Positions 17,115 to 64,000 of a stretch of DNA of 64,000 nucleotides are shown piece by piece. The stretch is taken from positions 248,001-312,000 of the IMG/VR virus record IMGVR_UViG_3300023179_000009. One strand, 5' to 3'. Position numbers and translations under genes: made by a program. The notes beneath the pieces were generated by a model. It made no database searches and had not been told where the DNA came from. It was given only the letters and a program-made list of their open reading frames with translations. Position 1 is the first letter of the stretch, and each line of letters opens with the position of its first letter.

Positions 17115-17435
17115 AAAAAAATTATTAATTATAGATAAATAATTCTAACAAAAAAGGTATTTTTGAAAAACAAATCAAATATTATTGATTTAAGCGACTG
17201 CAATAAGATAGTTGTTTCTAAAATTATTCTATCTGTTATGGGCTATTTTGAGTCTAAAGGGAAAAAAGTAACCCTTAAAAAGAAAACACAAAAAACCCAT
17301 AAAATTCTCACTGTACAAAAAGCCACTTGACATAGTGCGTATAATGTATTGGTGGCCCAAAAACACACACCGAACAGCCCGCCTATAATTTTTGATACCA
17401 ACTAGAGCGGCGTACCCCAACCGGAGAAACCGAAA

Positions 17436-18941
17436 ATGTCTGAGTGGTTTAGTGCCCATAAAGATGGATTGCGTCAAATTGCGGAAAGGTTAGTTGAACG
17501 TCGTGGGTTCGGTATTGTAGGAGGAGAACTCTATCAAAACGTGATGGACACCAACGCAACCTCTTGCGTTATCACTCTAAATAAACTCGCTGGTCGTCCC
17601 TTGGCCGAGTTAAGCGTTGAAGACAATGATCCCAATGGATTTCCTGATTTGGCTCACGCTTGGACTGTTTTTGCTCCTTCCTTGAAAAAGAGCGACCCCA
17701 CCAAGGCTGGAAGATTTAATGTTGGCGAAAAAATGGTTCTTGCTTTTTGCAAAGAAGCCAAAATTCACACAACCAAAGGTCTTGTAGAATTTAATCAAGA
17801 AGGCAGAAAAGAATATACTCGCAGAAAGAGAGAAGTCGGCACTGAATTTTGGGCTTTAATTGAGTGTAATCAAGAGCGTTATGATCAATTTATTGATTAC
17901 ATGAGAAAAATTATCGTTAGACCAGGATTGACTTTGACGGTTAACGGGGAAATAATTCAATGTCGTGAACCACTCACTAAATTTGTTGAAAAACTACCCA
18001 CGGAAATTGCTGGCGAAGATGGCATTCTTAGAAAATCAATACGCCAGACAGAGGTTCAAATTTACGAAGCGTTGCCGGGAGAAGAACCGTACTTGTACGA
18101 AATGGGAATCCCGGTTGTCGAAACCGGAGACAAGTGGCACTATAATGTTTTGCAAAAAGTTCCGTTGAATGTTGACAGGGATAATGTCACTCCTTCTTAC
18201 TTAAGAAACTTGCGTGTCGTTGTTTTCAACAACATGCATGAAAAAATTGAAGAAAGCGACGTTACATCTTCTTGGGTCAACGAAGCAGCGGATGATAAAA
18301 ATTGTTTGCCAGATGCCGTAGAAACTTTTCGTGTTAAGAGATACGGTGAGAAATCGGTTGCTTTTGACCCGACTAACCAAGAAGCAAATGCAGAAGCCGT
18401 GGCTCATGGTTATACCTTGATACCACCTAGGGGACTGAGTTCTGGTCAAAGAAAGAATCTTTACTCAGCAGGAACTTTGGTTTCTAGTAGTGATGCTTTT
18501 CCTTTGGCTGGCAAGGGTGCGTATAGTGATGATCCAAATGCTACTCCGGTAGAAGTCATCGAAGAAAATGACTGGACCGATGACATGTGTTTGATTCACG
18601 AATACACGACAGAAGTTGCAAAAAGATTGTTGGGTAAAAATGTAGATGTGAGATTCGTTAACTGTTCACGATATGCTTATAAGCCTTGGAGTGCATGTTT
18701 TGCCAGAGGTCACTTGTTATCAACCAGTTATTTTGATTACAACATTCACGCTCTTGGCAAAAAATGGTTTTCTTCAGGGGTCAATGAGAACGTTGATGAT
18801 TTAATTTTACATGAACTTGCCCATGAGTTTGAATCCAACCATCTATCGGAAGATTATTATAAGGCTTGCACAAAACTAGGTGCCAGACTTAAGGCAGAGG
18901 TTTTGAGAGATTATGATTGGTTCTTGAAGTTTGTTAAATAA
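17436..18941 (+). CDS. GHKL-type ATPase with C-terminal HExxH metallopeptidase-like motif
   Basis: ELYQNVMD (N box), VEDND.NG, S.KK....GRFNVGEK (G2 box); C-terminal LILHELAH...H. Confidence 0.65.
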   Translation: MSEWFSAHKDGLRQIAERLVERRGFGIVGGELYQNVMDTNATSCVITLNKLAGRPLAELSVEDNDPNGFPDLAHAWTVFAPSLKKSDPTKAGRFNVGEKMVLAFCKEAKIHTTKGLVEFNQEGRKEYTRRKREVGTEFWALIECNQERYDQFIDYMRKIIVRPGLTLTVNGEIIQCREPLTKFVEKLPTEIAGEDGILRKSIRQTEVQIYEALPGEEPYLYEMGIPVVETGDKWHYNVLQKVPLNVDRDNVTPSYLRNLRVVVFNNMHEKIEESDVTSSWVNEAADDKNCLPDAVETFRVKRYGEKSVAFDPTNQEANAEAVAHGYTLIPPRGLSSGQRKNLYSAGTLVSSSDAFPLAGKGAYSDDPNATPVEVIEENDWTDDMCLIHEYTTEVAKRLLGKNVDVRFVNCSRYAYKPWSACFARGHLLSTSYFDYNIHALGKKWFSSGVNENVDDLILHELAHEFESNHLSEDYYKACTKLGARLKAEVLRDYDWFLKFVK

Positions 18942-18968
18942 TTCTTTTCATTTTCAAAGAAAGAAAAC

Positions 18969-19826
18969 ATGAATACTTTTGAGTATTATGCTCCCACAAA
19001 GTTATCCAAAGAAGAAAAAGCCGAAATTGAAAATAAAATGAAAGAAGCTTTCTTTTGCTTCGAGTCTGTGGCAAAAGAAAGATATGGATTTCCAAATGTT
19101 AAAAAACTTAGGAACGATTACAAAAAAGGATTGGTTGATCTTGATGGCAAGGCCAAAGATCTAATGGACTGGATGATTGCCAACGAACAAAGAATCATCT
19201 CGGGCTATATCAAGATGGTCAAGAAAATGGGTTTAACTCCAAGTTATCGAAGCAAAAGAAGAGGGGTTTCTTATAGCGATTATCTCCAAGAAGCCTGTTG
19301 TGCTATTTATGATGCAATGTATTTGTATAATGGAAAAAGCAAGTTTTCTACATATTGCTTTTGGGTAATCAAGAACAACATCATTAACTACAATAGGTCT
19401 CAAGAAAGACAAGATGTTGTAGAGCATCACATTGATGAAATCAAACAACAGGTGTTTGATCTTCAAAATCAAGGAATCACCGTTGAGAAGGCTGTTTCAA
19501 AATTATCTTCAACAGACGAATCTGTTTTCGGAACAATTCAAAAAGTTCAATCCTCACTATTGGGTGAATCAAGATCTTTTCAAGATGGCGATGAAAGGCT
19601 TTTGATGTGGCGGGCCATAGAAGAAACTCAACTTAGCGATCTTGAAAGAAATTTAGTAGACAATTGTATTAACGGCAATCGTGGTCACATAGCCAGAATG
19701 GCAGAAACTGTTATAAATCCAAACACGGGAAAGTTGTATACAAAACAAAGGCTTTCCCAGATTTTTATTCGGGCTTGTGAAAAAATTCGCAAAACTTATC
19801 GCACCAAGCAACGAGCGGCTGCTTAG
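18969..19826 (+). CDS. RNA polymerase sigma-70-family factor (phage-encoded)
   Basis: Region-2-like YSDYLQEACCAIYDAMYLYN..SKFSTYCFWVIKNNI; region-4-like LSDLER...TKQRLSQIFIRACEKIRK. Confidence 0.7.
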   Translation: MNTFEYYAPTKLSKEEKAEIENKMKEAFFCFESVAKERYGFPNVKKLRNDYKKGLVDLDGKAKDLMDWMIANEQRIISGYIKMVKKMGLTPSYRSKRRGVSYSDYLQEACCAIYDAMYLYNGKSKFSTYCFWVIKNNIINYNRSQERQDVVEHHIDEIKQQVFDLQNQGITVEKAVSKLSSTDESVFGTIQKVQSSLLGESRSFQDGDERLLMWRAIEETQLSDLERNLVDNCINGNRGHIARMAETVINPNTGKLYTKQRLSQIFIRACEKIRKTYRTKQRAAA

Positions 19827-19860
19827 TTTGATACTAACTAACGAAACACAAGGAGTGAAA

Positions 19861-21138: not shown

Positions 21139-21765
21139 ATGGAATCTTTAAAAAGCGAAGTTAAGACATATTACGAAGGCGGAAGAGGCAAAAAACAATG
21201 TTCGAAGTGCTACAAATACGTCGCCGCAGTAACAAAAATTTGTGCTTGCGGAGCCGAATTTGCCGCAAAGACAAATTTTAAGGCTGAAATTTCCACCTTC
21301 TCGACAGGAGGCAGGGGTAGAAAAGAATGCCCTGACTGTCGTAAGTTTGTTGGCGCAATAGTGCCAAAATGTGTTTGTGGCTTTGATTTTAAACAAGCGA
21401 AGATTTCCAAAAAAGACGCATTATCTCAATCAATCAAATCGGCACTACAAGCAGCGAACTTACAATCCCAAGAAAAACTTACATTAAGTCCCGAATTTGC
21501 TTCTTTAATGGTTGGGTGCAAGTCAACAATAATCGCACCAGCAGGAAGTTGTCCTCATAAACTCGACAGTACGGAACCTGATAAAATAGATGAATGGATC
21601 AGCAAGGTGAGATTGTCATTCAAAAACAAACAACAGTTTCTAACAATCTCTGGAGTAATTTATTTCATTCATCAATTTTTTAATATGTTCAGTCCAGAAT
21701 ACAAAATTGTCAGGGATTACGTAGAAAAAAGTTTAGGTTCGGAAAGAAGTTTAGGTCTTAGTTAA
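21139..21765 (+). CDS. protein with two tandem Zn-ribbon repeats
   Basis: GGRGKKQCSKC...CACGAEF and GGRGRKECPDC...CVCGFDF. Confidence 0.65.
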   Translation: MESLKSEVKTYYEGGRGKKQCSKCYKYVAAVTKICACGAEFAAKTNFKAEISTFSTGGRGRKECPDCRKFVGAIVPKCVCGFDFKQAKISKKDALSQSIKSALQAANLQSQEKLTLSPEFASLMVGCKSTIIAPAGSCPHKLDSTEPDKIDEWISKVRLSFKNKQQFLTISGVIYFIHQFFNMFSPEYKIVRDYVEKSLGSERSLGLS

Positions 21766-21792
21766 TACCAACTAGTAAGTCGGAGAGCAACA

Positions 21793-24023: not shown

Positions 24024-24240
24024 AATTTTTTGGGTCAAAATTTTAGATTTTTTTGCATAAATGCTTGATTTTAAGCCACTTAAAGCGTGTTGTTAACGAT
24101 AAAAAAAAATTTCGGTATTTGATATTGACGACTTCTTTAAAAATTTTCTTGACTTTTGAGTTTTCTGTGTAAGGATTGATTTGAGGGCAAGGGTTGCCCT
24201 AAAGTTTTTACTTTTCAAGAACGGAATCAAGGAACAACCA

Positions 24241-25059: not shown

Positions 25060-25098
25060 ATCTTGGGTGCGTGATCTTTATGGTCACGCACCCAAGAT
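25060..25098. repeat. 17-bp stem-loop in intergenic region
   Basis: ATCTTGGGTGCGTGATC-TTTAT-GGTCACGCACCCAAGAT, immediately followed by TATAAT and a motif variant. Confidence 0.7.
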
Positions 25099-25147
25099 TA
25101 TAATTTGATACTATCTAGCAGGATGCATCCGACTCAAAAGGAATTTT

Positions 25148-26841: not shown

Positions 26842-27996
26842 ATGGAATATTATCATTGGCAAACTATGGTTGATGAACATCGTTGGATTCATCGACAAGA
26901 CAAAAAGAGAGTTCGTAATCTGACTGATGCTCAGATTAGGGATATTGAAATGGAGAATATATTGACTACTCCATTTAAAAAAGAGTCTAATCGTTGGCGC
27001 AGAGTGATTCGTTTGACAGGAGAAAATGTTTGGATCAATGCTGGCAAGCCATACTACAACATTCACCCTCAAATGGTTAGGTCGCTTTGCAATACAAATT
27101 TAGACAAGATACCAGCAAATTTGATCGAAGTTCCGGCGGGTCTGGAGGCAGTAGTTTTTAGATTTGCCGAGGATGTTCCGATTCGCCATATCTCAAATGA
27201 TGGATTTCACACTGTGGCAGCAGATGAGGTGCATCATTCTCCCATTTATTGTAGATCAGTTTTGTTTGGAAAAATAAAAAACGATCATTCAAAAAATGTA
27301 GCTGAAAATATAAAGAAAACCGCAGGAGATTTTTTTCAATTAATGAACATGCCTTCTTTAAGCGACAGTGTAAAATCTGTTATAGATATGGCCTCTGAAG
27401 GCTTTTATAAAGATGTTGATGACTTTATGATAATGTGTGTTGACGAAGGCTTTAGAGTTAAAGATCGTGGCGTTGATAGAAGTTTGTGTAATTTGATCAC
27501 TATTAATTGCAAACATGGTCAAAGCGTCTCAGAAGCAATACAGACTACCGTAGAACAAGCCTCCGCTGGTGAACAGGCTGTTATGGTTACTATGGGTAAT
27601 CGTTTATCAAATCTAATTCGTGTGATCGTATCTGCTGGTTTTTTGGCAAATTGTCCTGAAGACGATTTGGTTGTCCCAGATATTTTGAGTGCTGATAAAC
27701 AAAGTTTCAAAGATGCCTCTCAACGTGGAGATTCGGCGGCAATCCAAACTATTGTTGAGCGTGCAAAAAGGCGTGGCAAAAACGGTTACAATATCGGCAC
27801 ATCAGAGATGTTCGTCTCAGAGAACGAATCTGAACATCAAAAACAATACGATAGCACCGGCAAACAATTAAGTTTTAGCCACTTACGTGGTGGTCATCCT
27901 CATGCCGTCAGATATGGTGAGGGCAAAAATAAAGTAAAAATTAAATGGTTTAGACCAACTAGAGTCAGGCCGGATCTGCCATTTAAAAATGTTTAA
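26842..27996 (+). CDS. hypothetical protein
   Basis: 384-aa ORF, C-terminal HLRGGH..VRYG.G....KWF.P motif. Confidence 0.6.
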   Translation: MEYYHWQTMVDEHRWIHRQDKKRVRNLTDAQIRDIEMENILTTPFKKESNRWRRVIRLTGENVWINAGKPYYNIHPQMVRSLCNTNLDKIPANLIEVPAGLEAVVFRFAEDVPIRHISNDGFHTVAADEVHHSPIYCRSVLFGKIKNDHSKNVAENIKKTAGDFFQLMNMPSLSDSVKSVIDMASEGFYKDVDDFMIMCVDEGFRVKDRGVDRSLCNLITINCKHGQSVSEAIQTTVEQASAGEQAVMVTMGNRLSNLIRVIVSAGFLANCPEDDLVVPDILSADKQSFKDASQRGDSAAIQTIVERAKRRGKNGYNIGTSEMFVSENESEHQKQYDSTGKQLSFSHLRGGHPHAVRYGEGKNKVKIKWFRPTRVRPDLPFKNV

Positions 27997-29111: not shown

Positions 29112-29117
29112 TTTTTC

Positions 29118-36375: not shown

Positions 36376-36411
36376 TCAATACCAACTATGGATGGTGGAA
36401 AGGAACTAAAA

Positions 36412-38517: not shown

Positions 38518-38544
38518 TACCAACTAGGGTTCAAGGAGGATGTT

Positions 38545-47972: not shown

Positions 47973-48370
47973 ACCTTAATGTAGTGTGGTCTAAACAAAA
48001 AATACTAACCAATTGAGTTATTGCATTTTCCCCCAATTCAAACAAAATAAATCTATGCACTCTGAAATCAAAATATGCGAAGTAAAAAATAAAGAACATG
48101 AAGATAAGTTGTTAGAAGTCGCTAAATGGTTAGACGACACTACGTTTTCATGTACTTTTTCAATTATTGATGGCATCGCTCATTTCGATATAGACGCAGC
48201 AGATCCAGATTTTTGGGATCAAGATAGGTTTGAAAAATTTTCATCTCAAGAAGTTTTAAGTGCTTTGGCAAAATTTTTAGTTTGAAAAACAAAAACGACA
48301 CTTTACAATAAAAAAGTCGTTTTGTCGCCAACGCACACATTTGATACCAACTAGACGAAAGTAGAATCGG

Positions 48371-48523: not shown

Positions 48524-49319
48524 TTTTGTGTTATTCATTTGTGGATCAATAGTATCAACATTCGCAGGAATGGGTGTTTTGGTTTATATGGTGCATCTTG
48601 GGTATAAACAAAATAAGAAAAAGGATTAAATATATGCCACAATTTAGAGTCGAAATTTGCAGAGTTGGCTACGGTTTTAACGAAGTTTTAGTTGATGCAG
48701 CCAATGAAAGTGAAGCGCAGTATAAGGCTTTAGAAGATGCCGGGAACTTGTTGTTCTCTGAAAAAAGCAGCGAATATAATGTGAATTTTTGTGTAGAGTT
48801 ACAAAAGAAACCAGCCCTCCAGGATTAAAACAATGTTTGAACGTGAAATTGCTTTTACGGGAGAATATGCGGCAATTCCAAAAAATATGCAAGAAAGTAT
48901 GCTTGGATATGTGTTTGAAAACAAGCCTGTAGGTTCGTTTTTAGAAGCCGTCATCTGCAATGATCTAAAGGGTGCTTTTGGAAGAGCCGACAGCACAAAC
49001 TTGCCACTTTTACATCTTTATGTATTGTGGTTTTACAACGTGTGTCCTGCTCATTTAGTGGGACTTGATAATTATGTTTGTCACACTAAAAACAAATCAG
49101 AGTCCGTAACAAAAATCGGTTAGTTTTCGGAGCAAAAATTTATTTTGTATGATTTTAACGAAGACTATAGTTGGGAAGATAGTCTAAGATACTTTTTTAT
49201 TTGGTATCAGAATCTTTTAAAATCTGAAGCCGATACGAAAAACGATGGTTGGAGGTAAAAAACGAAATAATGTATACTACCTAGAGCCGCAAAGGATGGC
49301 ACTCAAGGGATTGTACTTT

Positions 49320-51733: not shown

Positions 51734-53833
51734 ATGAAGATTGCAACCAACAACTCGACCGTTCAAACCAATTCGACCAGCATTGAGAGCCACAATTTTT
51801 CTATCGGTGATGTTAGCACGATCATCGACATTCTGCGTAATCGTCTGTATAGCAACCCTATTCAAACGCTGACGCAAGAGTATCTTTCTAATGCCCGTGA
51901 TAGCCACCGTGAATCGAATCAAAAGCGTCCGATTACGGTCACGCTGCCGACTAAACTTGATAGTGTTCTCAAGATTCGTGACTATGGTGTTGGTCTTGAC
52001 AAGCAGCGTGTTCGTGATGTGTTTGTGAATTATGGCATTAGCACTAAGCGTAGCGATAATACGCAGACTGGTGGCTTTGGTCTTGGTGCCAAGAGTGCAT
52101 GGGCATATACGGACTCTTTCTGTGTGGTTAGTTATTACGATGGTGTTCGATACACTTATGTTGCCCACACTGGCAAGAACAAGAACGGTACGTTTGAATT
52201 GATTGATGAGTGCAGCACCAGTGAGCCTAATGGTGTCGAGGTTCAGATTCCTGTTAAGGAGTCTGATATCTTCAAGTTCATTAATGCTGTTTACCGAACT
52301 ACTTTCTTTTGGGATACGAAGCCTGAGTTGCAGGGCATCACTAAACTGGAAGTTCCCAAGGTGTATAGCCACAATGAGTACGATTTTCAGAAGAACAAGA
52401 CTACGATTGTCAAGGAATCTGATTTTACTCGGTTGTTGTTTAACACTGGTTACAACACGAATAAGATCTTCGCCCTTATTGACGGCATTCCCTACGATTT
52501 GTCGAAGGTTGTTGGTTCTATTCCTGCCGCTCGTCGTATCACCAATATGATGAAGGGTAACTATATCACTTTTATTTCTGTAAATAATGGCGATATCAGT
52601 GTGGCTGCTTCTCGTGAAGAAATCAGTAGCGACGAAAGTAACGTCAAGGCTGTCACCGCATTCTGTGATCGTGTCGTTGCTGATATTGTCGAGATTGTTC
52701 TTGATGAGTTTAACCGTTCGTTTGATTCACTCCAGGATTATGTTGATACTTATGAAAGTGTTGCTGAGGTAGTTAATTATCATCAGTTGTCGCTCACCGA
52801 TGAGCAGAAGAAGATGGTGTTTCGTTATACGGAGAATGGGGTCGAGTTCACGTTTGATCTGACTAATAACTACACCTGTGCTAAGTTTGAAAAGATTCGG
52901 CGTTATCGTTTGAGGAAGAAGCGAGTTCGTCATCACCTTGAAGTTGATGAGAACTCTCATATCAGTTCTGATTCCAAGTCTATTGTTGTAATCAACGATC
53001 AGGTGTTTGCCAACTCTGTCAAGTCGCAGAAAATTCGTGCGCTGCTTGGTCAAAATTACGATACGGTTTATGAGGTTGATTGCAAGGAGGGTTATCAATC
53101 AAAGATTCAAGCAATTTGCAAGGCTCAGTTGATGAGTGAATTGCAGTATGCTAAGAAGACCTATAATCGTACCACTGGTCGTGTTAAGGAAGATGATGAA
53201 GTTCAGATTCGTTGTCTGGCCCCTAGTTACGATTGTGTTGAGAGCGAGGGTATTGAAACCCATAAGGTTGAAGATCTTACCGATGATGGTAACAACTATG
53301 TGTTGATTCCATTTACTCGCAACGAAGAAAAGTTTAATAGCAACAACGCTGATTTTTTTCGGATGGTGCAGTTTCTTCGTGGCCGTGGTTGGAAGGTTGT
53401 TAAGTGTGGTAAGCGTGATTACGATTTGCTTAGTGAACTTGATAACTTTCATGAATATGATGAGGTTGTGGAAAACATCCCTGAATATTTTCCTATCAGC
53501 GATGCTGTGATTCGGACTAAGATTCTTTCTACGGTGAACACTTACCTTTATAACTTGAAGCGGTTCCGTGAACAGATTGTTTGCCCTATGTTTGCTGAAT
53601 TGTTTGGGTTGTATCCTGATCGACTTGATAGAAGTCCCCTGGATATTCATGAAGAGATTCTTGATACTTACTACCCAAGTCACAAGAAGTTTCGTAAGGA
53701 TTTTGCTCAACTTCAAAAGTTGGAGAGCAAAATCTATACCGACTACCCACTGTTGTCTTCTTGTCATAGCGAACGCATGATTGCAGAATACGTTGTTTAT
53801 ATCAATGCCAAGTATGAGTCCAGAAAGAAGTAA
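51734..53833 (+). CDS. rIIA-like protein (N-terminal GHKL/HSP90-like ATPase)
   Basis: LYSNPI...EYLSNARDSH, IRDYGVG, STKR.DN..GGFGLGAKS..AY.DSF.V.S, PNGVEV.IP. Confidence 0.75.
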   Translation: MKIATNNSTVQTNSTSIESHNFSIGDVSTIIDILRNRLYSNPIQTLTQEYLSNARDSHRESNQKRPITVTLPTKLDSVLKIRDYGVGLDKQRVRDVFVNYGISTKRSDNTQTGGFGLGAKSAWAYTDSFCVVSYYDGVRYTYVAHTGKNKNGTFELIDECSTSEPNGVEVQIPVKESDIFKFINAVYRTTFFWDTKPELQGITKLEVPKVYSHNEYDFQKNKTTIVKESDFTRLLFNTGYNTNKIFALIDGIPYDLSKVVGSIPAARRITNMMKGNYITFISVNNGDISVAASREEISSDESNVKAVTAFCDRVVADIVEIVLDEFNRSFDSLQDYVDTYESVAEVVNYHQLSLTDEQKKMVFRYTENGVEFTFDLTNNYTCAKFEKIRRYRLRKKRVRHHLEVDENSHISSDSKSIVVINDQVFANSVKSQKIRALLGQNYDTVYEVDCKEGYQSKIQAICKAQLMSELQYAKKTYNRTTGRVKEDDEVQIRCLAPSYDCVESEGIETHKVEDLTDDGNNYVLIPFTRNEEKFNSNNADFFRMVQFLRGRGWKVVKCGKRDYDLLSELDNFHEYDEVVENIPEYFPISDAVIRTKILSTVNTYLYNLKRFREQIVCPMFAELFGLYPDRLDRSPLDIHEEILDTYYPSHKKFRKDFAQLQKLESKIYTDYPLLSSCHSERMIAEYVVYINAKYESRKK

Positions 53834-53837
53834 TTCA

Positions 53838-55157
53838 ATGAAGTACTATCTGTTGAATAGCAGCATTGTTGTGTTTGTTGACAATAATGTTCACACCATT
53901 AGCAACAACGATTACCGATTCGAACAAGTCAAGGCTGCTATTGCTTGTAACAATCTTGATTTTGTTCGTTCGTTGATTGACCCTAACTATAGTCTTAACA
54001 AAGAAGGTTTTGTAATTCGTAATGGTGTTGTCTTTTATCAAGACAATCCTATCCCCACCGTGTTGGGAAATCGGTTCATGAGCATGAGCCAGGATAGTTT
54101 TGAATTTCGTAGTATCTTCAACTTTTGGTTCAATATGAAGACCAGGGTTGATGATGATACGGCTTCAAACATTATCAATGAACTTGTCCACAGGAATGCC
54201 TATGCTGTTACTGAGGATGGTTTCTATCTTCTTTACAACAATAAGGAGATTGATCAAACCAATAATGTTCTCAACAAGCGTAATCAAAATGAAGTGTTTC
54301 ACTTCTATAATTATGCTACCTGTCCTGCTAAGTATTTTGCTATGTTTGAAGAACAGCGTAGTTTTAGCAGTGTGATTCAAGAAGTGTTTGGTTTCTGCAC
54401 TAAGAAGTTGCGAAACCTTGCTGTTCAAAAAGTGTTTAACACCAAGGATAACTTCTTTAATTATAAGTGGCTTTTCTATGGCGAGGCATTCAAAGATATT
54501 CTCGCCACAGATAATATTCTTTATGCTATTGAACACGAACTTCTCAATACTGATTTGGGAGACATCGACAACTATCAGGATTTGAAGGTGTTTCTCAAAG
54601 ATTATTGTGTAGAAAAGAATGGATCCTATAGTCAAAAGAAGATGCTTAACTTCTTGGAAAGTGTCACCGACAAACACCAACTTGTTGAAATTGGTACTTT
54701 CTACACGGCTGTTAAGCACCAGTTTAGCATAGATATTCAGGGTTTAAATTTTGTCAATAACTGCGATACGATTCACGCTTATATGAAACGTGAGTATGGT
54801 CGCATCCAAAATCCAATTTTTATGCTTAACAATGATCCTGAGATTGAGGCTTTGGATGAAGTTGAATTTGCTAATTTTCGTGTTATGGTTCCTAAGACCA
54901 ATCATGACTTGATCGCATGGGGCGGAATTATGCACCATTGCGTTGGCGGTTTTACTTATGCGAAAGATGTTAAAAACAAAGTTTGTCAGATTCTTTCGAT
55001 AAACGACAAGACCACTAACGAAATGCTTTATACTCTTGATATTCGTAGAAAATCTTTATCTCAATGTCTTGGCAAATACAATAAAGCACCTTCGGCTGAA
55101 GATCGCAATACTATCGTTGAATTCCTGCGTAACAAGAATCTTATTTATAAGGAGTAA
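53838..55157 (+). CDS. protein with rIIB-like N-terminus and PcfJ-like C-terminal domain
   Basis: Directly follows the rIIA-like gene; N-terminal V.Y...IP.VL..R...FNFW.N...TEDG resembles rIIB; C-terminal DL..WG..MHHCVG..Y. Confidence 0.5.
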   Translation: MKYYLLNSSIVVFVDNNVHTISNNDYRFEQVKAAIACNNLDFVRSLIDPNYSLNKEGFVIRNGVVFYQDNPIPTVLGNRFMSMSQDSFEFRSIFNFWFNMKTRVDDDTASNIINELVHRNAYAVTEDGFYLLYNNKEIDQTNNVLNKRNQNEVFHFYNYATCPAKYFAMFEEQRSFSSVIQEVFGFCTKKLRNLAVQKVFNTKDNFFNYKWLFYGEAFKDILATDNILYAIEHELLNTDLGDIDNYQDLKVFLKDYCVEKNGSYSQKKMLNFLESVTDKHQLVEIGTFYTAVKHQFSIDIQGLNFVNNCDTIHAYMKREYGRIQNPIFMLNNDPEIEALDEVEFANFRVMVPKTNHDLIAWGGIMHHCVGGFTYAKDVKNKVCQILSINDKTTNEMLYTLDIRRKSLSQCLGKYNKAPSAEDRNTIVEFLRNKNLIYKE

Positions 55158-55274
55158 TACCAACTATGCCAACTACAACGCCAACTAAAGCACCCACAAA
55201 AACCCCAGCCAGACCCAAACCGGCTCCGTTCAATCCTCCTAAACCAGAACAGTTACCCGAACCTAAAAACTAAA

Positions 55275-56315: not shown

Positions 56316-57554
56316 TACCGTTCATGTAGAATGTCGGACTTGTGGCAAAGTTTGTTCTATACAGTGTAACAAAGAGGATTTGTCTAAATGGAGAAATGGT
56401 GAAGGTTATATTCAAGACTTATTGCACTACCTTTCTGCTGCTCAACGAGAACTTTTAATTAGTGGCACATGCGGTGAGTGTTTCGATGAGATGTTTTCTT
56501 TAGATGAAGACGAAGAAGAGAGCGACGATACCAACTAAGAAATCGGAGGTAAACAAATGCAAGATTTAATTGATCGCTTTCAAACTCAACAAGGCTGGGA
56601 CAATAATACTATTCTAGATCTGCTCAAAAGTTTTATTGCCACCAGACAATCATACTGGCCCGATGATAACCCAATGATTCGTGATCTTGAGGGGATGTTT
56701 CAAAATGTTGCCGACGTTGAAAATGGAATTATCTAGAATCAACATCATTAGGAATCAAACAAATGAAAACCGTTTACACTAAAGATGCCCCCAAATCAAG
56801 ACAACGTAAAAACCCCCCTAGTGGTGTGTGCTTTAGTTTTCCTTGGGAAAGCATTTGCCATATTGTTCAAGACTTTCGTGTGAAACATAATTTCACCAAC
56901 GAAAAGGAAGGTGTTATTGAGGTTTTTGTGGATGACCAAGGCGTGACTTTTTACACCGAACGTGTTTGATACCAACTAGAATCCTGCACCTTGCCCCTAA
57001 AATAAAAAAATGGCTACAAAGATTGACATTAGTTCACTTGATGCGACCACTAAGAAAAAAATCAAAGAATTAAAGAATAGAGTTGGCGAACTTACCGAAG
57101 GGGTAAGTAAGAAAATTACCATCACTGTTGAAGTAAACCTTAACGCTCATTGGGCAATGGGAGAAACTTGCTTTACAGATTTTTATTATCCCGATGACGA
57201 ATCGGCAATTGATCTTGAAACGAAAAAATACAAGAAACAAATTGATGAGGAAATCAAGGTTATCCTAGATTTCTCTGACAGCGTTGCCGATAAACTTGGC
57301 GTTGATCGCACCGAATTTTGGGATCAGTGCTTTTTGGGTTAAATGATACCAACTAGAAGTGAAAGGAGCAAAAAAAAATATGAGTAGGAAACTGTACACT
57401 GTATACACGCTAAAGAGATTTGTTGATGGATTAAAGTATGTTGTTTATAAATGGGAACATGGAAGGGTTCAACCCACTTATTACAGCAATAAGAAACTCG
57501 CTGAACAAAATAAAAATTGGGTGGCTGGTTAAAAATTACAAATGATACCAACTA

Positions 57555-57585
57555 GAGGGGAGCGAACGAGTGATTCGCTCCCCTC
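57555..57585. repeat. 12-bp stem-loop directly after a motif copy
   Basis: GAGGGGAGCGAA-CGAGTGA-TTCGCTCCCCTC. Confidence 0.65.
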
Positions 57586-57998: not shown

Positions 57999-60900
57999 AA
58001 CCATGAAAGAAACCATTGCTAAAAAGTGGGTGAAAGCACTTCGGTCTGGTAAGTACAAGCAAGGAAAAGATTTGTTAAAAAAGATTACCAAGAAACAAGA
58101 ACAGCATTGTTGCTTGGGAGTTCTCTGCGATCTTTACAACAAAGAACAAAAATTAAAGAATAAGCCACCGATTAAGCAGAAGATTGAGCGAGACATCTCA
58201 AATCGTTATGATCTTGTTCGTTTTGGCACCACAGCCGAATTGTTACCAACAACGGTTAGGCGTTGGGCTGGTGTAAAAACAAGCGATGGCATGATATTGT
58301 TTAAAGATTACATACATCGTGATAGTTTATCGAGTTTAAATGATCGAGGTGTTACTTTTAAGAAAATTGCCAACTTGATTGAAAAACACTTTAAGTACCT
58401 TTAAGGAAACACAAATGTCAAGTGCTATTTTAGAAGAAAAGAAGATAGAGAAAACGGCAAAAACTTCAGAGAATCAAATTTTGGATATGCTTTGGAGAGA
58501 AAAAGGCAAGCCAAAAAATTATCTCAAAATCAAAGTTGTAAATGTTTTTGACAACGCCTACAGAGTAAATGTTTGGTCTGAGTTTGAGGACAAGATTCAC
58601 AAGATCAATCGTGTGAGAATTTCTCATAGTTACTTTTGCAAAGTTGTTGACCAGGAATTGTTGGTGATATAATGAAAAAGATTCTTTTTGTTTTGTTTGT
58701 TTTGATGAGTGGGTGTGATAATGCTAACTCGGAAGTTGACAAGATACTCAAAGCAAAGCAAATTGTTTTGAGTAAAATTAATTTCCCAGACACCGCTGAT
58801 TTTCATGAAATGAAAACCCAAGTTCAGGGAAATAATGTTAGTCTTACTGTGACGGCAAAAAATGCTTTCGGTGTGCCTGCCACTCAAACCTTCACCGTTC
58901 GTGTTGACTAGGAAAAATTATGGGCTACCTTACAACATTCACTATTTACAATGATGGCATACATTTAATCAAAGAACATCCTCAAGATTTTGCAGAGGGT
59001 GTGTTTTCGGCAGCAAATGAATTTAGAAACGCTCCTATTGATATTGCAATTGGCGGATTTGTTAATCTAATTAGGGTGCAAAGAAGTCGTCACGCTGATG
59101 ATAATACCATCTATGTTCACATGGGAAATTGTGTTGTTGAACTAAACCCTTATTCGGAAGAAACTAAACGTCTAGCAGAAACAAAACCTGAGTTTTTCAA
59201 GAAATTAGTGCAGTTTCTTTCTAAAGACGTAAAAGAACTTAAAACCTTGATTAAAAAGAAAAACGATGAATAGTTTTCTTAAAGGTTTTATGAGTTTGTT
59301 TAGTTGGATAGATTCATTTCACGATCTTTCTCCGAAAGATCGTGTTGATCAAGTGTTAGATGATTTTTACAACGATCATCCTTGGATAGAGCGTGATGAT
59401 AATAAGGCTCTTCAAAAAGATGCTGAAACTATAGCAAGAGATTTTTATGAAAGACGATAAAGTTGTAATGAGTTGCATTGCTTTTTTATTTTGGATTTTT
59501 GGCATGAGTCTGATTGTTTATCATGCTGGTTGGGGGGTTGCCATTGGTTTGTTTTTCGTTATGTGGGCTGATAATGTTAATTCGGTTTTAAGATTAGAAA
59601 AATGTGGAATTAAATGGTGGTTTTATGACATCTAAAAAAAGTAACAATCAATATTATTTCGTGTTTGTTTGGGGCGACGTTGAACCAGAGATTCACGGTC
59701 CTTACAAAACTCCACAATCACGTTTTAAAGCAGTTCGTGCTAGCGTCAAAGAAAACGGGCTGGATGGCAATAGTCATTTTTGGCTTGACAACGTGAATGG
59801 TAAACTTGAGATTGGAACATACGCTAGTAGTGATTTTAGTGATATAGTTGAAAATGAAGAGTGTGTATAAAGGATAAATCAATGAGTGAAAATTTTGTTG
59901 ATTATAGTTTTACCGCAACCGGAAGTTGGTCTATACAAAAACAGTTAAAGCCCTTTTTTGGCAGTCTCAACAATGTTATTGGATTTGAATTACCAGACGG
60001 TCGATCTGTTAGGCTGGTAATTGCTCTTGAAGTTGAAAACAAACAGACCGGCGATATGCAATATGTGACCAGTGAGCGAGAAATGGATGATTTAGGATTT
60101 TATGCTTTAGAGTATGATCGTCTCGATTTTGAAATGTTAGAAGAGTGATTTTGATACCAACTAGCAAAGCGTAATTTCAAACTAAAAAAAGGAACTTAAA
60201 AATGTCGAAAGTCAAGCGTTGCGTTGAATTGTCTCGTCAAGAAGCCGAAATTTTGGTCGCAGAGAACATTTACGAAACTTTGGTAAATGACGCCAATTAT
60301 TTAAAAGAACTTATTCTTGAAGATGGGTTTGACGATCATTTTGGGCCTGTGAAAAATTTTACCGATGAAGCACTTGCCGACAGGATTTTTGAATTAAATC
60401 TTGCTGAGAAAATCGCACAGGACAACGATGCTGAAATGGTTGTTTTGCGTCTTAATCAAATTAGTAATTTTGTTGTTTACGAACGAGAAGATGAGTTGAA
60501 TATCAACACCACGGCTGTTGACACAATCGTTCACGCCGGTTAAAACTTCGATACCAACTAGGACCACGCCAGTTCACAAAGGAGTAAAAATGAAAAAGTT
60601 TAATATCCCAGAGAAGTGTATCATCAAGTATCTTCGTGATCGCAAGCGAAATCCTTGTGGAGTTTTGGTTGCCGCAAGAAGAACTGACGGAACGGTGAGT
60701 GTTCATTACTCATATTGCAACAAGAAGACTGATCGCTTTAACAAGTTCACCGCCTTGACGATTGCTTTTGGTCGTGCGTTAGAAGATAAGCCTTACGAAG
60801 ATTTTAGCAAACTTCCTCGCCATGTGCAGCGTGAATTGGCTGAGTTTAACACAAGAGCAACTAAGTATTTTAAGGTTAACAAGGAAGAAATTTGTAGTTG

Positions 60901-61587: not shown

Positions 61588-61659
61588 GGCCCTGTGGTGA
61601 AATAGATATCACAACTCTCTTCTAAAGAGTTATTCCTCGTGCGATTCGAGGCAGGGCTA
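61588..61659 (+). tRNA. tRNA-Arg(TCT)
   Basis: GGCCCTG/CAGGGCT acceptor, ACTCT-CTTCTAA-AGAGT anticodon arm, CCTCG-TGCGATT-CGAGG T arm (atypical TGC loop). Confidence 0.8.
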
Positions 61660-62202
61660 CTTTTTTCTAATGTATTTTTTTGTGTTTATTTCTTCATGTA
61701 CTTCTCGGTGACAATTAGAACAAAACAAGTTGCATTTATCTAATTCTCGCTTCATTTCTTCATTAAAACACCGTTGCTTTGCGTGGGCTATTGTAAAGTC
61801 TTTTTTAGATGGATCTTTGTGATGAAACTCTAGAGCTGCCTTGCATTTTTTATACCCGCATTTTTCACATTTTCCTCCCTTGTACTTAATCATTTTTAAT
61901 TTAATTTGTCTTTGTCTTGCGATTGTCTGCTCATTGGTGCATATTTTGCAATAAACAGAAGAGTTTGGCTTTCCTCTTCGTGAATAAAAATCTTCTGTAG
62001 GAACCTGTTCTTTACATCGAGGACAAAAGCGGAATTCCCCGTACTCCCCTGTGGGCTTGTCTTTAAATGTGACAAACTTTGATTTTAGTTCATGTTTTTT
62101 AGTCCAGTAACGGATAGTGGTTAAAGACTTGCCAGTTTTTTTACTAATTTGATTTAATGATAAATTTTGATTGATATAATTTTCAAGAATATGTTTTTCC
62201 AT
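61657..62202 (-). CDS. HNH endonuclease with N-terminal HTH and Zn finger (paralog of 47427..47972)
   Basis: KGGKCEKCGY...ALEFHH.DP..K...ELDKCNLFCSNCHREVH; its stop codon overlaps the tRNA-Arg 3' end. Confidence 0.85.
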   Translation of the reverse strand: MEKHILENYINQNLSLNQISKKTGKSLTTIRYWTKKHELKSKFVTFKDKPTGEYGEFRFCPRCKEQVPTEDFYSRRGKPNSSVYCKICTNEQTIARQRQIKLKMIKYKGGKCEKCGYKKCKAALEFHHKDPSKKDFTIAHAKQRCFNEEMKRELDKCNLFCSNCHREVHEEINTKKYIRKK

Positions 62203-64000
62203 ACTCTATAATAGTGGATTATTTTGATTTTTTATCCCTTTTTGCTATAATCTCCTTTTCATTAACTACAAGTAAGATTATGAGCGATAAAATCACAAAA
62301 GATGAAATAGAATACGTAGAGATGTTGTGTCTTCAAACAAACACACCAGTTCCAAGCGATTTAAGAGAATATACAGTTAAGCAGTTGTTTGATTTTCTTA
62401 GCATATTAAGAAAAAAAACAACTAATGATAATCGCACCAATGTGCAACTAGACAATCGTATGCCCAATGTATCCTCTGTAAATTTTGAAGGTGAATGATG
62501 AGAGTTGTGGCAAAAACGCCCTCGGGTTGGTATGAAAGAAAAAATATCAAACTAACACCAACCGAACGACAAGAATTGTTTTATGGTTGTGATGATGTTA
62601 AGCGTGAACAAATTGTGAAAAATTTTAAAGAACAATCCATTGTCAAATTAAACGATAACGAAATAGATTGTTTTGAAAAAATTTTTCAATCATTTAACAT
62701 AGATGGCGAATTAGTTATTGCTAATTTGATGATTCACTCTTGTAGGGCCACAGTAGTTACCAAAAATAAGAACACGTTCACAAGGACTGAGCATCAATGG
62801 TCAAGTTAACGCAAGAAGATATTGAAAATCTAAAAACGGTTCTTAACGAACAGTTTGAGAGCATACAAAGATTAATGCCTTTGTTGTATGCTACTTGCAA
62901 ACAACCAAAAGATTTTCAAGAAATTTATCAAGATATTTTAGAGTGCAATACAGTGATGATGGAGATAATTGAAGGCCCAAAAGGCGGCATTGAAAAACTC
63001 ATAGATCGAACGATTTAATCGCAATGTGTGGAACATATCTTGAAAAGTCGTTTTGAAAATCACCCCACCGAAACGCTCATTCGATACCATCTAGCGTGTC
63101 AGAGAACACTAGTTGTCTTAAAAAGTGAAAACATCACTCAACTGATTGTTGAGTTACAAAATGAATTGAGTCGTAGAAATGAAACTGTTTGCAATTTTCA
63201 AGAATGAAGAATTTTTAGGAACAGTGAAAAATTTTAGTGGTGGTGGTCTTAGAGATTGGGCAAGTCAGTTCTATAAAATTCCTATTGTTGAAATCAAAGT
63301 TTATGAACTTGTTGAGGTGAAGTAAAATTCATCTAATCAAATTCTAATAGTAAAATGGTAAAATCATAGTATTACTAATTTACTATGACTAACATTTTAT
63401 TATGGATCGCTTTGTCCGCTCATGTTTTTTTTCTTTTTAGAGTAAGAAATTCTCCTGCTCAAAGTAAAAAGAAAAAAAGAATTCCAAAGCAATATATCGA
63501 AACAAAAAAATATATCAAAAGTTTAGAAAAACAAGTTGTGGATTTAGGACTTTTACAAACTAAGCCTTAAAAATGTCTCATTTAAATCTTGTTGATTTGG
63601 AACCAGAGTATCGTCAATCGGTTGTTGCTTTCCGCCAACTGCTCGATATGCTTCGTGAAGGTGTTGAAGAACCCGTAGGTGAAACATCGAAGATTGTGGT
63701 TCGTTGGCACGAATGCGATTTTATGGGATTGTGTAGCATTGATCCGATTGAAAGCGATTCTATAGATTCCAGGTACAGTTTTTTGGTTGAAAGGATTTTG
63801 AGTCGTTGGAACAATGTTGTTGGTTCAACGATTCGTTTAAACGACAAAATAGCATATCACTTAAATGTTGATAAGAGTTTGGTGTGGCGCAGTTTTTTCG
63901 ATGACGGAAAGTAAACGATGGAACAACAATGCGATGTAAATTTGTGGGTTGTTAAAGTGTTAGACAACCGAACCGAAAATTTTAATATTATCGGTGGTAT

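What the first reader, a model, noticed from the sequence alone, without database searches (positions are those of the whole stretch)
17392..63094. About 25 strand-specific copies of TTGATACCAACTAG punctuate gene boundaries: candidate phage promoter/operator regulon or gene-cassette site
Seen by eye: 12 exact GATACCAACTAG, 19 with the core ATACCAACTA, and 6 variants differing only in the central 3 nt (ATAC-YWN-CTA). All are on the + strand and none lies left of 17.3 kb. Many overlap the upstream stop codon (TAA/TGA ending at 21765, 38517, 51687, 55157, 56969; TAG/TAA ending at 42198, 56538). Most lie about 10-60 nt before the next start codon, and some are followed by hairpins (35888-35919, 57555-57585). 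Some pairs bracket a single small ORF (35869/36376, 51436/51684, 56966/57343, 57343/57542, 60151/60548). Inference: conserved halves with a variable centre suggest a protein-recognised site, either a non-sigma70 promoter (the sigma gene at 18969 sits in the first motif-headed unit) or an RNA processing/binding site. Alternatively it is a recombination site that shuffles single-gene cassettes in this hypervariable region. I do not recognise it as a described element.
Basis: partly seen in the sequence, partly recalled or inferred. Interest (0 to 1): 0.8.

Follow-up and report, generated by a model that had tools for sequence, protein, structure and literature searches.

The report
Huge-phage promoter motif bounding gene cassettes
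A 13-letter DNA word repeated about 30 times on one strand of this 459-kb freshwater phage is most likely the phage's own promoter, probably read by its own sigma factor, and its copies also mark where related phages have gained, lost or swapped genes.

Summary
tG-ATACCAACTA-G occurs 12 (exact 12-mer) to about 29 times (credible variants) in the window. All copies are on the + strand, all lie right of 17.3 kb, and chance predicts none. Nearly all copies sit in short spacers between + strand genes.

The window is part of a 459-kb uncultivated freshwater phage. The motif continues beyond the window and sits at the same gene boundaries in relatives whose proteins are only 38-47% identical. There it has drifted in a graded, lineage-specific way: TGATACC..., TGATGCC..., TGACGCC..., and a longer form in a relative with 61% GC.

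Six bases after the block, a pyrimidine-purine step occurs in 57 of 88 sites against a 21% background. This also holds in the distant lineages and looks like a start-site signature. No -35 element is conserved.

The neighbouring ORF is a full sigma factor with domains 2, 3 and 4. One residue on its region-3.0-like helix co-varies with the motif base at -15, and a prediction made from this held in two further lineages.

Gene-content differences between relatives and natural populations break at motif copies, as with PeSL cassettes of T4-like phages.

Verdict: a phage-specific, single-block promoter family. It is a new member of a known kind. No RNA data exist.

The parts
17392..17405 (+). Motif copy TTGATACCAACTAG. 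First of the series, in the divergent junction, 30 nt before the GHKL-ATPase-like gene (17436-18941).
   Evidence: Kept at the same place in L121, L122, L123, L131, L132, L133 and L134.
18417..18430 (+). Motif-like copy TTGATACCACCTAG inside the 501-aa ORF, about 540 nt before the sigma gene. Possible internal promoter; weaker call.
   Evidence: Kept with changes in L121 and L123. In distant relatives the sigma gene has its own intergenic copy.
18969..19826 (+). Phage sigma factor, 285 aa, with sigma domains 2, 3 and 4. Proposed reader of the motif.
   Evidence: Pfam Sigma70_r2, E 7e-9. The profile aligns to RpoD/SigA from region 2 to region 4.2, E 2e-7. The AlphaFold model (pLDDT 84) best matches sigma-A chains of initiation complexes. 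Residue 154 co-varies with motif base -15.
19828..19841 (+). Motif copy TTGATACTAACTAA, 1 nt after the sigma stop and 19 nt before the AAA+ gene start (19861).
   Evidence: The orthologous copy is present in all relatives.
21762..21775 (+). Motif copy TTAATACCAACTAG. Its TAA is the stop of ORF 21139-21765.
25060..25098 (+). Very stable hairpin (-30.9 kcal/mol) directly upstream of the motif copy at 25105.
25105..25118 (+). Motif copy TTGATACTATCTAG, 29 nt before ORF 25148-26338.
   Evidence: Kept in L121.
27949..27962 (+). Motif-like copy TTTAGACCAACTAG in the last 50 nt of the AcrVA2-like ORF. The variable HTH/TnpB/MscL segment starts 26 nt after it.
35869..35882 (+). Motif copy TTGATACCAACTAG, 3 nt after the stop of ORF 35635-35865.
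35889..35920 (+). Terminator-like hairpin with a T-run. It begins at the inferred start position of the 35869 copy.
   Evidence: -21.1 kcal/mol.
36376..36389 (+). Motif copy TCAATACCAACTAT, abutting the stop of ORF 35941-36375, before the SNF2 helicase gene.
38514..38527 (+). Motif copy GTGATACCAACTAG. Its TGA is the stop of the SNF2 helicase gene.
42185..42198 (+). Motif copy CTAATACTAACTAG. Its TAG is the stop of ORF 41923-42198.
42934..42947 (+). Motif copy CAGATACCAACTAG.
43819..43832 (+). Motif copy GTGATACCAACTAT.
46208..46221 (+). Motif copy TTGATACCAACTAG, abutting the stop of ORF 45812-46207. The next ATG is only 10 nt behind.
48341..48354 (+). Motif copy TTGATACCAACTAG. It restarts + strand ORFs after the minus-strand ORF 47427-47972.
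49271..49284 (+). Variant copy TGTATACTACCTAG. Weaker call.
50498..50511 (+). Motif copy TTGATACCAACTAG. Homology to the rearranged relative L126 starts about 60 nt to its left.
50941..50954 (+). Variant copy TTGATACTAGCTAG, followed by a canonical sigma70-like promoter at 50969-50996.
51226..51239 (+). Variant copy TTGATACTTACTAG.
51436..51449 (+). Copy AGAATACCAACTAC, followed by a small hairpin.
51684..51697 (+). Motif copy GTAATACCAACTAG. Its TAA is the stop of ORF 51511-51687. It heads the rIIA gene.
53661..53674 (+). Variant copy TTGATACTTACTAC inside the 3' end of rIIA, about 170 nt before rIIB. L126 has a copy at the same relative position.
55154..55167 (+). Motif copy GTAATACCAACTAT. 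Its TAA is the stop of rIIB.
56525..56538 (+). Motif copy ACGATACCAACTAA. Its TAA is the stop of ORF 56290-56538. Homology breaks in L126 and in population X7 lie here.
56966..56979 (+). Motif copy TTGATACCAACTAG. Its TGA is the stop of ORF 56763-56969. A crossover lies in its leader (56986-56994) in X5 and X7.
57343..57356 (+). Motif copy ATGATACCAACTAG.
57542..57555 (+). Motif copy ATGATACCAACTAG. It is the right boundary of a 509-nt segment that is replaced in populations X5 and X7.
57555..57585 (+). Stable hairpin directly behind the 57542 copy.
   Evidence: -23.3 kcal/mol.
60151..60164 (+). Motif copy TTGATACCAACTAG.
60548..60561 (+). Motif copy TCGATACCAACTAG.
63081..63094 (+). Variant copy TCGATACCATCTAG. 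L126 has ATACCTACTA at the orthologous place.
17327..17345 (+). TTGACA-N7-TATAAT element about 50 nt upstream of the first motif copy. It occurs once per genome segment and is kept in L122 and L131. Candidate host-type (early) promoter or operator that would give the first sigma mRNA.
   Evidence: Function is inferred only.

Best explanation
The motif is a phage-specific promoter built as one contiguous block. With the core's first A as position 0, the conserved letters run from -2 to +10. The inferred transcription start is the purine at +17, which places the block at about -19 to -7. ATAC (-17 to -14) acts as an extended -10-like half and CTA(G) (-10 to -7) as a -10-like half, and there is no -35 element.

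The most likely reader is host core RNA polymerase carrying the phage's own sigma factor (18969-19826). Its domain 3 would read the upstream half and its domain 2 the downstream half.

The proposed sequence of events is as follows. A host-type promoter in the divergent junction gives the first transcripts of the GHKL-ATPase, sigma and AAA+ genes. Sigma then switches on all motif-headed units, including its own gene in most lineages. These units carry pre-replicative and accessory genes: ligases, helicase, rIIA/B, CsrA, an Acr-like gene and many small ORFs.

Stable hairpins placed just before or just behind some copies act as terminators for incoming transcription. This makes composite terminator/promoter joints.

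As a by-product, the ~14-50 nt of identity shared by motif plus leader serve as crossover points for homologous recombination. Genes are therefore gained, lost and moved as motif-headed units.

Shown here: the motif, its positions, its conservation and drift, the Y-R step, the hairpins, the breakpoints, and the sigma fold. Inferred: that it is a promoter, where transcription starts, who reads it, and the timing.
For: (1) Real, strand-specific and intergenic.

(2) It continues outside the window: 12 or more copies in the 12.5 kb of L005 and 20 copies in the 19.6 kb of L126, all on +.

(3) It is kept before the same genes (500-aa gene, sigma, AAA+) in relatives with 38-47% sigma identity, where the spacers are otherwise unalignable.

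(4) It shows lineage-specific graded drift. The forms are TGATACCAACTA (window, L122, L128, L130, L133), TGATACCAACAA (L134), GATACTGACTA (L136), TGA[C/T]GCC[A/T]ACTATG (L132), TGACGCCCACTA (L131) and CTGACGGACACCCGATA (L129, 61% GC), always on the + strand only. This argues for a phage-encoded reader.

(5) A pyrimidine at +16 and a purine at +17 occur together in 57/88 sites against a 21% background (p 1e-18). In the distant lineages alone the figure is 20/29 (p 9e-8). It holds where the start codon is 35-100 nt away, so it is not the ribosome site. Bacterial-type polymerases start 6-8 nt after the -10-like element, as in phiEco32 and phage 7-11 (PMC8948821).

(6) The distance from motif to start codon ranges from 6 to about 100 nt, and one copy (L005:800) precedes a tRNA cluster. 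A translation signal is therefore unlikely.

(7) Intrinsic-terminator-like hairpins lie immediately upstream of copies at L005:11188, L122:17514, L128:7531 and L129:6282.

(8) The ORF at 18969 is a complete sigma factor and is syntenic with the motif series in every lineage.

(9) Alignment column 169 (window residue 154) lies on the long helix that aligns with sigma70 region 3.0. It is Lys in all three lineages with G at -15 and His/Ser/Thr/Ala/Gly in all eight with A. Column 188 behaves the same way. The rule was stated before P0008 and P0009 were fetched, and both obeyed it.
Against: There are no RNA data. No RNA run was listed as holding this genome, so neither the start site nor promoter activity is shown.

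The sigma has a region-4.2-like helix that is nearly invariant in the family, yet no -35 element is conserved. In phiEco32 the single-element promoter was explained by the sigma lacking region 4 (PMC8948821).

The co-variation rests on few events: the sigma tree supports two switches but forces only one.

Three copies are followed by a hairpin with a T-run that begins at or near the inferred start (35889; L129:6606 and 17487). That is awkward for a promoter unless the start lies inside the stem.

A few copies leave only 6-10 nt to the ATG (46208, L005:5376, L005:9866). This implies leaderless or nearly leaderless mRNAs.

Only about a quarter of the 459-kb genome was seen, so a phage-encoded RNA polymerase cannot be excluded.
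Confidence: 0.6

Rival explanations
1. It is a promoter, but for an RNA polymerase encoded by the phage itself, for example a virion-packaged multisubunit enzyme as in phiKZ/AR9-like jumbo phages. The sigma gene would then be just one of the early genes it drives.
For: AR9 virion-RNAP early promoters have the same architecture: a ~13-nt conserved block, 6 unspecified bases, then a conserved purine start. phiKZ and phiR1-37 are similar (PMC5312081). The motif-headed genes look like early genes. The sigma gene itself is motif-headed in most lineages. That is simpler if another enzyme reads the motif. Only about 110 of 459 kb were seen.
Against: No RNA polymerase subunit gene was found in the window, L005 or the relatives' loci. 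The phage invests in a complete sigma factor, which implies it uses host core enzyme. Two sigma domain-3 residues co-vary with the motif. The block is not AT-rich, unlike the phiKZ-type early promoters.
Confidence: 0.15
2. It is a binding site for a phage regulator (operator or activator box) rather than the promoter core. It would sit next to promoters that are too weakly conserved to be seen.
For: It is a compact asymmetric 13-nt site. Host-type promoter elements lie directly upstream of a few copies: L005:756-790, and TATAAT before 17392 and 25105.
Against: Most copies have no -10 or -35-like element at any fixed distance on either side. The spacers are often too short (17-20 nt to the ATG) to hold another promoter downstream. 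The Y-R step at a fixed 6 nt is what a promoter core predicts. The HTH_17 gene at 28068 is absent at that locus from relatives that keep the motif.
Confidence: 0.08
3. It acts in RNA as a cleavage or binding site that cuts a long + strand transcript into single-gene mRNAs or controls their translation or stability.
For: It is strand-specific, sits at cistron boundaries and often overlaps the upstream stop codon. At some copies a stable hairpin starts at the block's last bases: L005:8576 and L129:13778 pair with the motif's own TAG or GATA. Where a host-type promoter lies upstream, the motif is in the transcript.
Against: No known phage or host ribonuclease reads a 13-nt single-stranded word. 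The graded drift with a sigma domain-3 residue and the Y-R step 6 nt downstream have no rationale in this model. Terminator-then-motif arrangements mean that many copies would never be transcribed from upstream. Rfam finds nothing but tRNAs.
Confidence: 0.07
4. It is a dedicated recombination site, like an integron attC or a homing target, that a phage recombinase uses to move single-gene cassettes.
For: Gene gain, loss and replacement boundaries fall at copies: 56513-56528, 56986-56994, 57543 and L126:4243. Hyperplastic stretches are made of motif-headed single genes.
Against: No integrase or recombinase lies next to the arrays. The site has no inverted-repeat structure. Crossover points are spread over motif plus leader rather than fixed. 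It is equally conserved before core genes that never move, namely sigma, AAA+ and rIIA. Recombination between repeated promoters explains the same pattern in T4-like phages without a dedicated enzyme (PMC2839356, PMC4122927).
Confidence: 0.03

Closest known systems
Single-element middle/late promoters of phage phiEco32 (tAATGTAtA) read by its sigma gp36, and late promoters of phage 7-11 (GTAAtg-16-aCTA) read by gp47 (PMC8948821)
   Same: A phage-encoded sigma redirects host core polymerase to a short phage-specific word placed before phage genes. The start lies 6-9 bp behind the word. Related phages keep promoter positions while the word changes with the sigma. The 7-11 -10-like element is also aCTA.
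   Different: Here the block is longer (13 nt) and extends into the extended -10 zone. The sigma keeps a region-4-like domain although no -35 element is seen. There are dozens of copies, about one per 1-2 genes, against 6-8 in those phages. Nothing has been tested experimentally.
PeSL (promoter-early stem-loop) cassettes of T4-like phages (PMC2839356, PMC4122927)
   Same: Repeated promoter plus stem-loop units sit in front of small orphan genes in hyperplastic regions. Insertions, deletions and replacements between close relatives have their crossover points inside these units. The stem-loop can lie before, within or behind the promoter.
   Different: PeSLs are ~100-bp strong sigma70-like -35/-10 promoters read by the host sigma. 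Here the unit is a 13-nt non-sigma70 block plus a variable leader, and only about 15 of 87 copies have a strong hairpin. Mini-circles have not been looked for.
Virion-RNA-polymerase early promoters of phiKZ/AR9-type jumbo phages (AAATATATATTAT-6N-G; PMC5312081)
   Same: A block of about 13 nt, a 6-nt unspecified gap and a purine start, in many copies before early genes of a very large phage.
   Different: Those blocks are AT-rich and are read by a phage-encoded, sigma-less multisubunit polymerase. This phage encodes a sigma factor, and no phage polymerase gene was seen in the parts available.
T4 late promoters (TATAAATA) read by gp55
   Same: A single -10-type element without a -35 element, read by a phage sigma. 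It often overlaps the stop codon of the gene before it. This comparison is from general knowledge and was not checked here.
   Different: gp55 is a minimal region-2-only sigma that serves late structural genes. Here a full-length sigma sits with early- and middle-type genes.

Membership tests
sigma70-family sigma factor (for ORF 18969-19826) | Region 2 (core binding, -10 recognition) | tested here: met
   Pfam Sigma70_r2, E 7e-9, above the curated cut-off. The FSTY..W..K/R N motif is conserved in 13 homologues.
sigma70-family sigma factor (for ORF 18969-19826) | Regions 3 and 4 in the canonical order | tested here: met
   The family profile aligns to RpoD/SigA from region 2 through region 4.2, E 2e-7. 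The model (pLDDT 84) matches full-length sigma-A chains over more than 300 columns, Foldseek probability 1.00.
sigma70-family sigma factor (for ORF 18969-19826) | Binds core RNA polymerase and directs initiation | not testable with these tools
   Needs biochemistry.
Phage-sigma-dependent single-element promoter (phiEco32 gp36 type) | Short conserved word on the coding strand directly upstream of phage genes, absent from the other strand | tested here: met
Phage-sigma-dependent single-element promoter (phiEco32 gp36 type) | No conserved -35 element | tested here: met
   The logo of 47 sites is flat from -50 to -3.
Phage-sigma-dependent single-element promoter (phiEco32 gp36 type) | Transcription starts 6-8 bp downstream of the element | tested here: inconclusive
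   Only an indirect signature is available: a Y-R step exactly 6 nt after the block in 57/88 sites, p 1e-18. No RNA run was listed.
Phage-sigma-dependent single-element promoter (phiEco32 gp36 type) | Sigma lacks region 4, the explanation given for the missing -35 in phiEco32 | tested here: not met
   This sigma has a conserved region-4.2-like helix. It works like that type, but the sigma is of a different build.
Phage-sigma-dependent single-element promoter (phiEco32 gp36 type) | The word changes together with the sigma among related phages | tested here: met
   Six motif variants were found across eleven sigma lineages. Residue 154 (Lys or not) tracks G or A at -15, and the prediction held for two new lineages. 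The tree forces only one switch.
PeSL regulatory cassette (T4-like phages) | Strong sigma70-like -35/-10 promoter | tested here: not met
   No -35/-10 pair lies in or next to the block.
PeSL regulatory cassette (T4-like phages) | Adjacent stable stem-loop acting as terminator | tested here: inconclusive
   About 15 of 87 copies have a hairpin of -19 kcal/mol or stronger within 48 nt, several with T-runs. Most copies have none.
PeSL regulatory cassette (T4-like phages) | Precedes orphan genes in hyperplastic regions; indel and replacement crossovers lie inside the element | tested here: met
   Window versus L126. Natural populations X5 and X7. A shared motif plus leader precedes unrelated ORFs.
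phiKZ/AR9 virion-RNAP early promoter | Phage encodes split beta/beta'-like RNA polymerase subunits | not testable with these tools
   Only about 110 kb of the 459-kb contig could be read, and none was seen there.
phiKZ/AR9 virion-RNAP early promoter | AT-rich ~13-nt block, 6 N, purine start | tested here: inconclusive
   The geometry matches. The block is not AT-rich.
Integron attC-like recombination site | Imperfect inverted repeats that fold, with an integrase nearby | tested here: not met
   The block has only a 3-bp inverted repeat (TTG..CAA). No integrase was found in the window.

The most novel reading that the evidence does not exclude
The block is a promoter whose upstream half is read base by base by sigma domain 3, with Lys154 pairing with G at -15. 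In that case this clade of huge phages carries a naturally diversified set of orthogonal sigma/promoter pairs. The same units would also act as an evolved gene-shuffling system, forming promoter-bounded mini-circles that let huge phages trade accessory genes while keeping each gene under phage-timed control.
Probability: 0.2. Interest if true: 0.6.

Novelty: new member of a known kind. Interest (0 to 1): 0.42.

Why it matters
Huge uncultivated phages are known almost only as gene lists. A recognisable promoter word gives their transcription units, a first temporal class of genes, and a way to find the regulon in any related contig.

The graded motif series with a co-varying sigma residue is a ready-made natural experiment on how sigma domain 3 reads DNA, and it could supply orthogonal sigma/promoter pairs.

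The breakpoints at motif copies extend the PeSL idea. Repeated promoters acting as recombination joints that move ready-to-express genes are now seen outside T4-like phages with host-type promoters, in a different phage group with its own promoter type.

Tried and rejected
1. Motif as a -35 or MotA-box-like element with a -10 further downstream. Rejected: nothing is conserved downstream except the Y-R step, and the ATG is often only 17-20 nt away.

2. The 5' half (TTGATA/CTGACG) as a true -35 hexamer read by region 4. Rejected on geometry: it would lie at -20 to -15.

3. A T7-type promoter with the start inside the block. Not supported: the positional signal lies 6 nt behind the block.

4. A ribosome-related signal. 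Rejected: distances to the ATG range from 6 to 100 nt, and one copy precedes tRNA genes.

5. A link to the TnpB gene at 29156 (a TTGAT-like target motif, recalled from memory). No support: the TnpB unit is an insertion absent from relatives that keep the motif.

6. The 501-aa neighbour as a polymerase. It is GHKL-ATPase-like by Atlas features.

7. Cultured relatives. None were found: megablast found nothing, tblastn with sigma found nothing, and rIIA is 32% identical at best.

8. An exact 14-mer scan of viral contigs.

9. RNA evidence. No RNA run was listed as holding the stretch.

10. Sigma70-like sites overall. They are not enriched: 66 found against 60 expected.

11. My crude gene model mis-called some starts and let a few spurious minus-strand ORFs win. 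Stop-codon distances are reliable, start distances less so.

12. One search failed on a size limit and was not repeated for 16-36 kb.

Full report
**What is there.** GATACCAACTAG occurs 12 times, all on the + strand, with none expected from shuffles. ATACNNNCTA occurs 37 times against 3.5 expected, 35 of them on +. With up to two mismatches to TTGATACCAACTAG there are 22 sites on + and none on -. A logo of 47 sites shows one compact block, T-G-ATACCAACTA-G, and nothing conserved in the 50 nt upstream. Left of 17.3 kb the genes lie on both strands and no credible copy exists. From 17.4 kb on, almost all genes are on +. About 90% of that stretch is coding, yet most copies lie in the spacers. The block starts -14 to +7 nt from the upstream stop codon in 17 strong sites, and its own TGA, TAA or TAG often serves as that stop.

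**What genome this is.** The window is positions ~248-312 kb of IMGVR_UViG_3300023179_000009, a 458,813-bp viral contig. Runs that hold it are lake and freshwater metagenomes. Genes in the motif region include a sigma factor, AAA+ proteins, two RNA ligases, a DNA ligase, an SNF2 helicase, rIIA/rIIB, CsrA, MscL, an AcrVA2-like protein, TnpB and many small ORFs. No cultured phage is close. The motif goes on beyond the window. L005 (contig 318.9-331.5 kb) has at least 12 copies in 12.5 kb, all on +.

**Conservation and drift.** A relative at 88% nucleotide identity (L121, with L123 and L124) keeps the copies at orthologous places. Further along the same relative contig, L126 has 20 + strand copies in 19.6 kb.

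More telling are contigs that carry sigma homologues of only 38-47% identity. They are syntenic: two minus-strand genes, a ~500-aa gene, sigma, an AAA+ gene, an RNA ligase and CsrA. They carry a related word before the same genes:
- ATACCAACTA in L122, L128, L130 and L133.
- TGATACCAACAA, eight copies, in L134.
- GATACTGACTA in L136.
- TGA[C/T]GCC[A/T]ACTATG in L132.
- TGACGCCCACTA in L131.
- CTGACGGACACCCGATA, 10-12 copies, in the 61%-GC relative L129.

All of these are on the + strand only. A spacer word that survives this much divergence is under selection. A word that changes by lineage points to a reader encoded by the phage, not the host's housekeeping machinery. A more distant phage that shares only rIIA (L127) has no such word.

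**Why a promoter.**
1. Six bases after the block there is a pyrimidine-purine step: Y at +16 in 64 sites, R at +17 in 73, and both together in 57 of 88. The YR background in the same sequences is 21% (p 1e-18). The distant lineages alone give 20 of 29 (p 9e-8), although their start codons are 35-100 nt away, so the signal is not the ribosome site. This is the geometry of initiation by bacterial-type polymerases. In phiEco32 and phage 7-11, starts lie 6-9 bp behind the sigma-specific element, and the 7-11 element is aCTA (PMC8948821). It puts the block at about -19 to -7, with ATAC in the extended -10 zone and CTA(G) in the -10 zone.
2. The distance to the start codon varies from 6 to ~100 nt, and one copy precedes a tRNA cluster. 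This argues against a translation signal.
3. Terminator-like hairpins with T-runs sit immediately before copies at L005:11188, L122:17514, L128:7531 and L129:6282. This is the classic end-of-unit, start-of-unit arrangement. Other copies have a strong hairpin right behind them (35889, 57555, L005:8576, L129:6606, 13778, 17487). PeSLs show the same range of stem-loop placements (PMC2839356).
4. Internal copies lie near the 3' ends of long genes, ahead of the next gene. An example is inside rIIA ~170-190 nt before rIIB, in both the window and L126.

**Who reads it.** The ORF at 18969-19826 is a complete sigma factor:
- Pfam region 2.
- A profile alignment to RpoD/SigA from region 2 through region 4.2.
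- A confident model whose best structural matches are sigma-A chains in initiation complexes.

It is syntenic with the motif series in all lineages and is itself motif-headed in most.

Sorting the sigmas by the motif base at -15 gave two alignment columns in which the three G lineages (L132, L131, L129) share one residue that none of the A lineages has. One is column 169 (window residue 154), with Lys against His/Ser/Thr/Ala. It lies on the long helix that aligns with sigma70 region 3.0, the part that reads the extended -10. The other is column 188 (residue 172), with Phe. I then predicted that P0009 (Gly) and P0008 (Ser) would have A-type motifs, even though P0009 is the closest relative of G-type P0007. 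Both did.

The sigma tree is poorly resolved. It supports two switches but forces only one, so this is suggestive, not proof.

The HTH protein at 28068 is an unlikely reader. It lies in a 3.8-4.1-kb segment (HTH, TnpB, MscL) missing from L121, L123 and L124, which keep the motif.

**Bootstrapping.** In the divergent junction of each lineage there is a small conserved + ORF (17163-17330). Next comes a host-type element, CTTGAC(A/G)-N7-TAT(A/T)AT in three low-GC lineages and TTGCAA-N16-TACGAT in L129. The first motif copy follows about 50-70 nt later. A canonical TTGACA-N16-TATAAT also lies just before the copy at L005:800. Tandem host-type and phage-type promoters would let host polymerase make the first sigma mRNA. 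This step is inferred.

**The cassette aspect.** Between the orthologues of window genes 56557 and 57010, the window has one gene. L126 has seven unrelated ones, with six motif copies in that stretch. The genes behind L126:15388, 15808, 16282 and 17692 are not paralogues, yet they share the block plus a similar ~35-nt leader, which also resembles the leader at 17392. A block of genes (window 58.0-63.9 kb) lies on the other side of rIIA in L126 and begins right behind a motif copy.

I laid contigs of four related freshwater populations on 55-61 kb:
- A replacement of 57034-57542 has its right boundary at the first letters of the copy at 57542.
- Homology breaks lie at 56513-56519, just left of the copy at 56525. 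L126 homology also ends there.
- A crossover at 56986-56994 lies in the leader of the copy at 56966. The foreign side ends in its own TTGATGCCAACTAG plus a similar leader.

The breaks are spread over block plus leader, and no recombinase is nearby. This fits recombination between dispersed repeats, as shown for PeSLs (PMC2839356, PMC4122927), rather than a dedicated site.

**Rivals.** The strongest rival is a promoter for a phage-encoded polymerase. AR9, phiKZ and phiR1-37 virion-RNAP early promoters are also a ~13-nt block, 6 N and a purine start (PMC5312081). The motif-headed genes look early, and three quarters of the genome was not seen. Against it stand the complete sigma gene, the sigma co-variation, the lack of any polymerase gene in the parts read, and the block's non-AT composition. 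An operator, an RNA processing site and a dedicated recombination site each explain less; details are in the Rival explanations section.

**Weak points.** There are no RNA data. The sigma has a region-4-like domain without a visible -35 partner. Three copies are followed by a T-run hairpin starting at or near the inferred start. A few copies imply nearly leaderless mRNAs.

**Verdict.** This is a phage-specific, single-block promoter family, probably sigma-dependent, whose copies also serve as recombination joints. It is a new member of known kinds (phage-sigma promoters and PeSL-like cassettes) in an uncultivated huge-phage clade. It offers a usable motif series and a testable sigma-DNA recognition rule.

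Noticed in passing
window 27989-32109: A variable segment holds an HTH_17 protein (28068-29111), a TnpB-like gene (29156-30781) and an MscL homologue (31770-32195). L121 lacks 27989-31769, and L123/L124 lack 27989-32109. The first 37 nt of the MscL gene are duplicated at 29118-29154, directly in front of the TnpB ORF.
   Followed up: partly
window 17327-17345; L122:8234; L131:8232: CTTGAC(A/G)-N7-TAT(A/T)AT is conserved once per genome in the divergent junction of three lineages. The 7-nt spacing is too short for a normal -35/-10 pair. It could be an extended -10 promoter plus something else, or an operator.
   Followed up: partly
window 17163-17330: A small + strand ORF of about 55 aa with a TTG start lies in the divergent junction. 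It is conserved in position and partly in sequence in L122, L129 (called gene 4505-4687), L130 and L131. It is not motif-headed.
   Followed up: no
window 24181-24450 and relatives: A CsrA homologue is encoded by the phage (Pfam E 6e-19). It is present in most relatives at varying places, so the phage may interfere with host post-transcriptional control.
   Followed up: no
window 26842-27996: The orthologues of this ORF in relatives carry the Pfam family AcrVA2-like (anti-CRISPR-like).
   Followed up: no
window 1-16400: The motif-free left part encodes two family-2 glycosyltransferases, a ClpX-like ATPase, three radical-SAM/SPASM proteins, a carbamoyltransferase, an AAA ATPase and an N6/N4 DNA methylase. 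It may be a modification cluster.
   Followed up: no
window 35924, 50997, 51495, 51716; L005:3790: A second recurrent word, TATAGAAAG(G/A)ATT, ends 5-9 nt before start codons, usually behind a motif copy plus hairpin. It may be a strong ribosome site or a further signal.
   Followed up: partly
L005:814-896: Directly behind a motif copy and before tRNA-Leu lies a stretch with a tRNA-like T-arm (GGTTCGATTCC). Neither ARAGORN nor Rfam called it. It could be a degenerate tRNA or a structured leader.
   Followed up: no
L129 (whole locus): A syntenic relative has 61% GC, against 33-43% in the others. It has its own 17-nt motif, so the clade spans hosts of very different composition.
   Followed up: partly
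window 56727-56743: A 16-nt insertion (ATTATCTAGAATCAAT) is present in contigs of populations X5 and X7 but not in the window.
   Followed up: no
window 47427-47972 and 61657-62202 (minus strand): Two 181-aa minus-strand ORFs lie inside the + strand motif region. They have no Pfam hit and no motif on their strand. Each lies next to tRNA genes (47350; 61512 and 61588).
   Followed up: no
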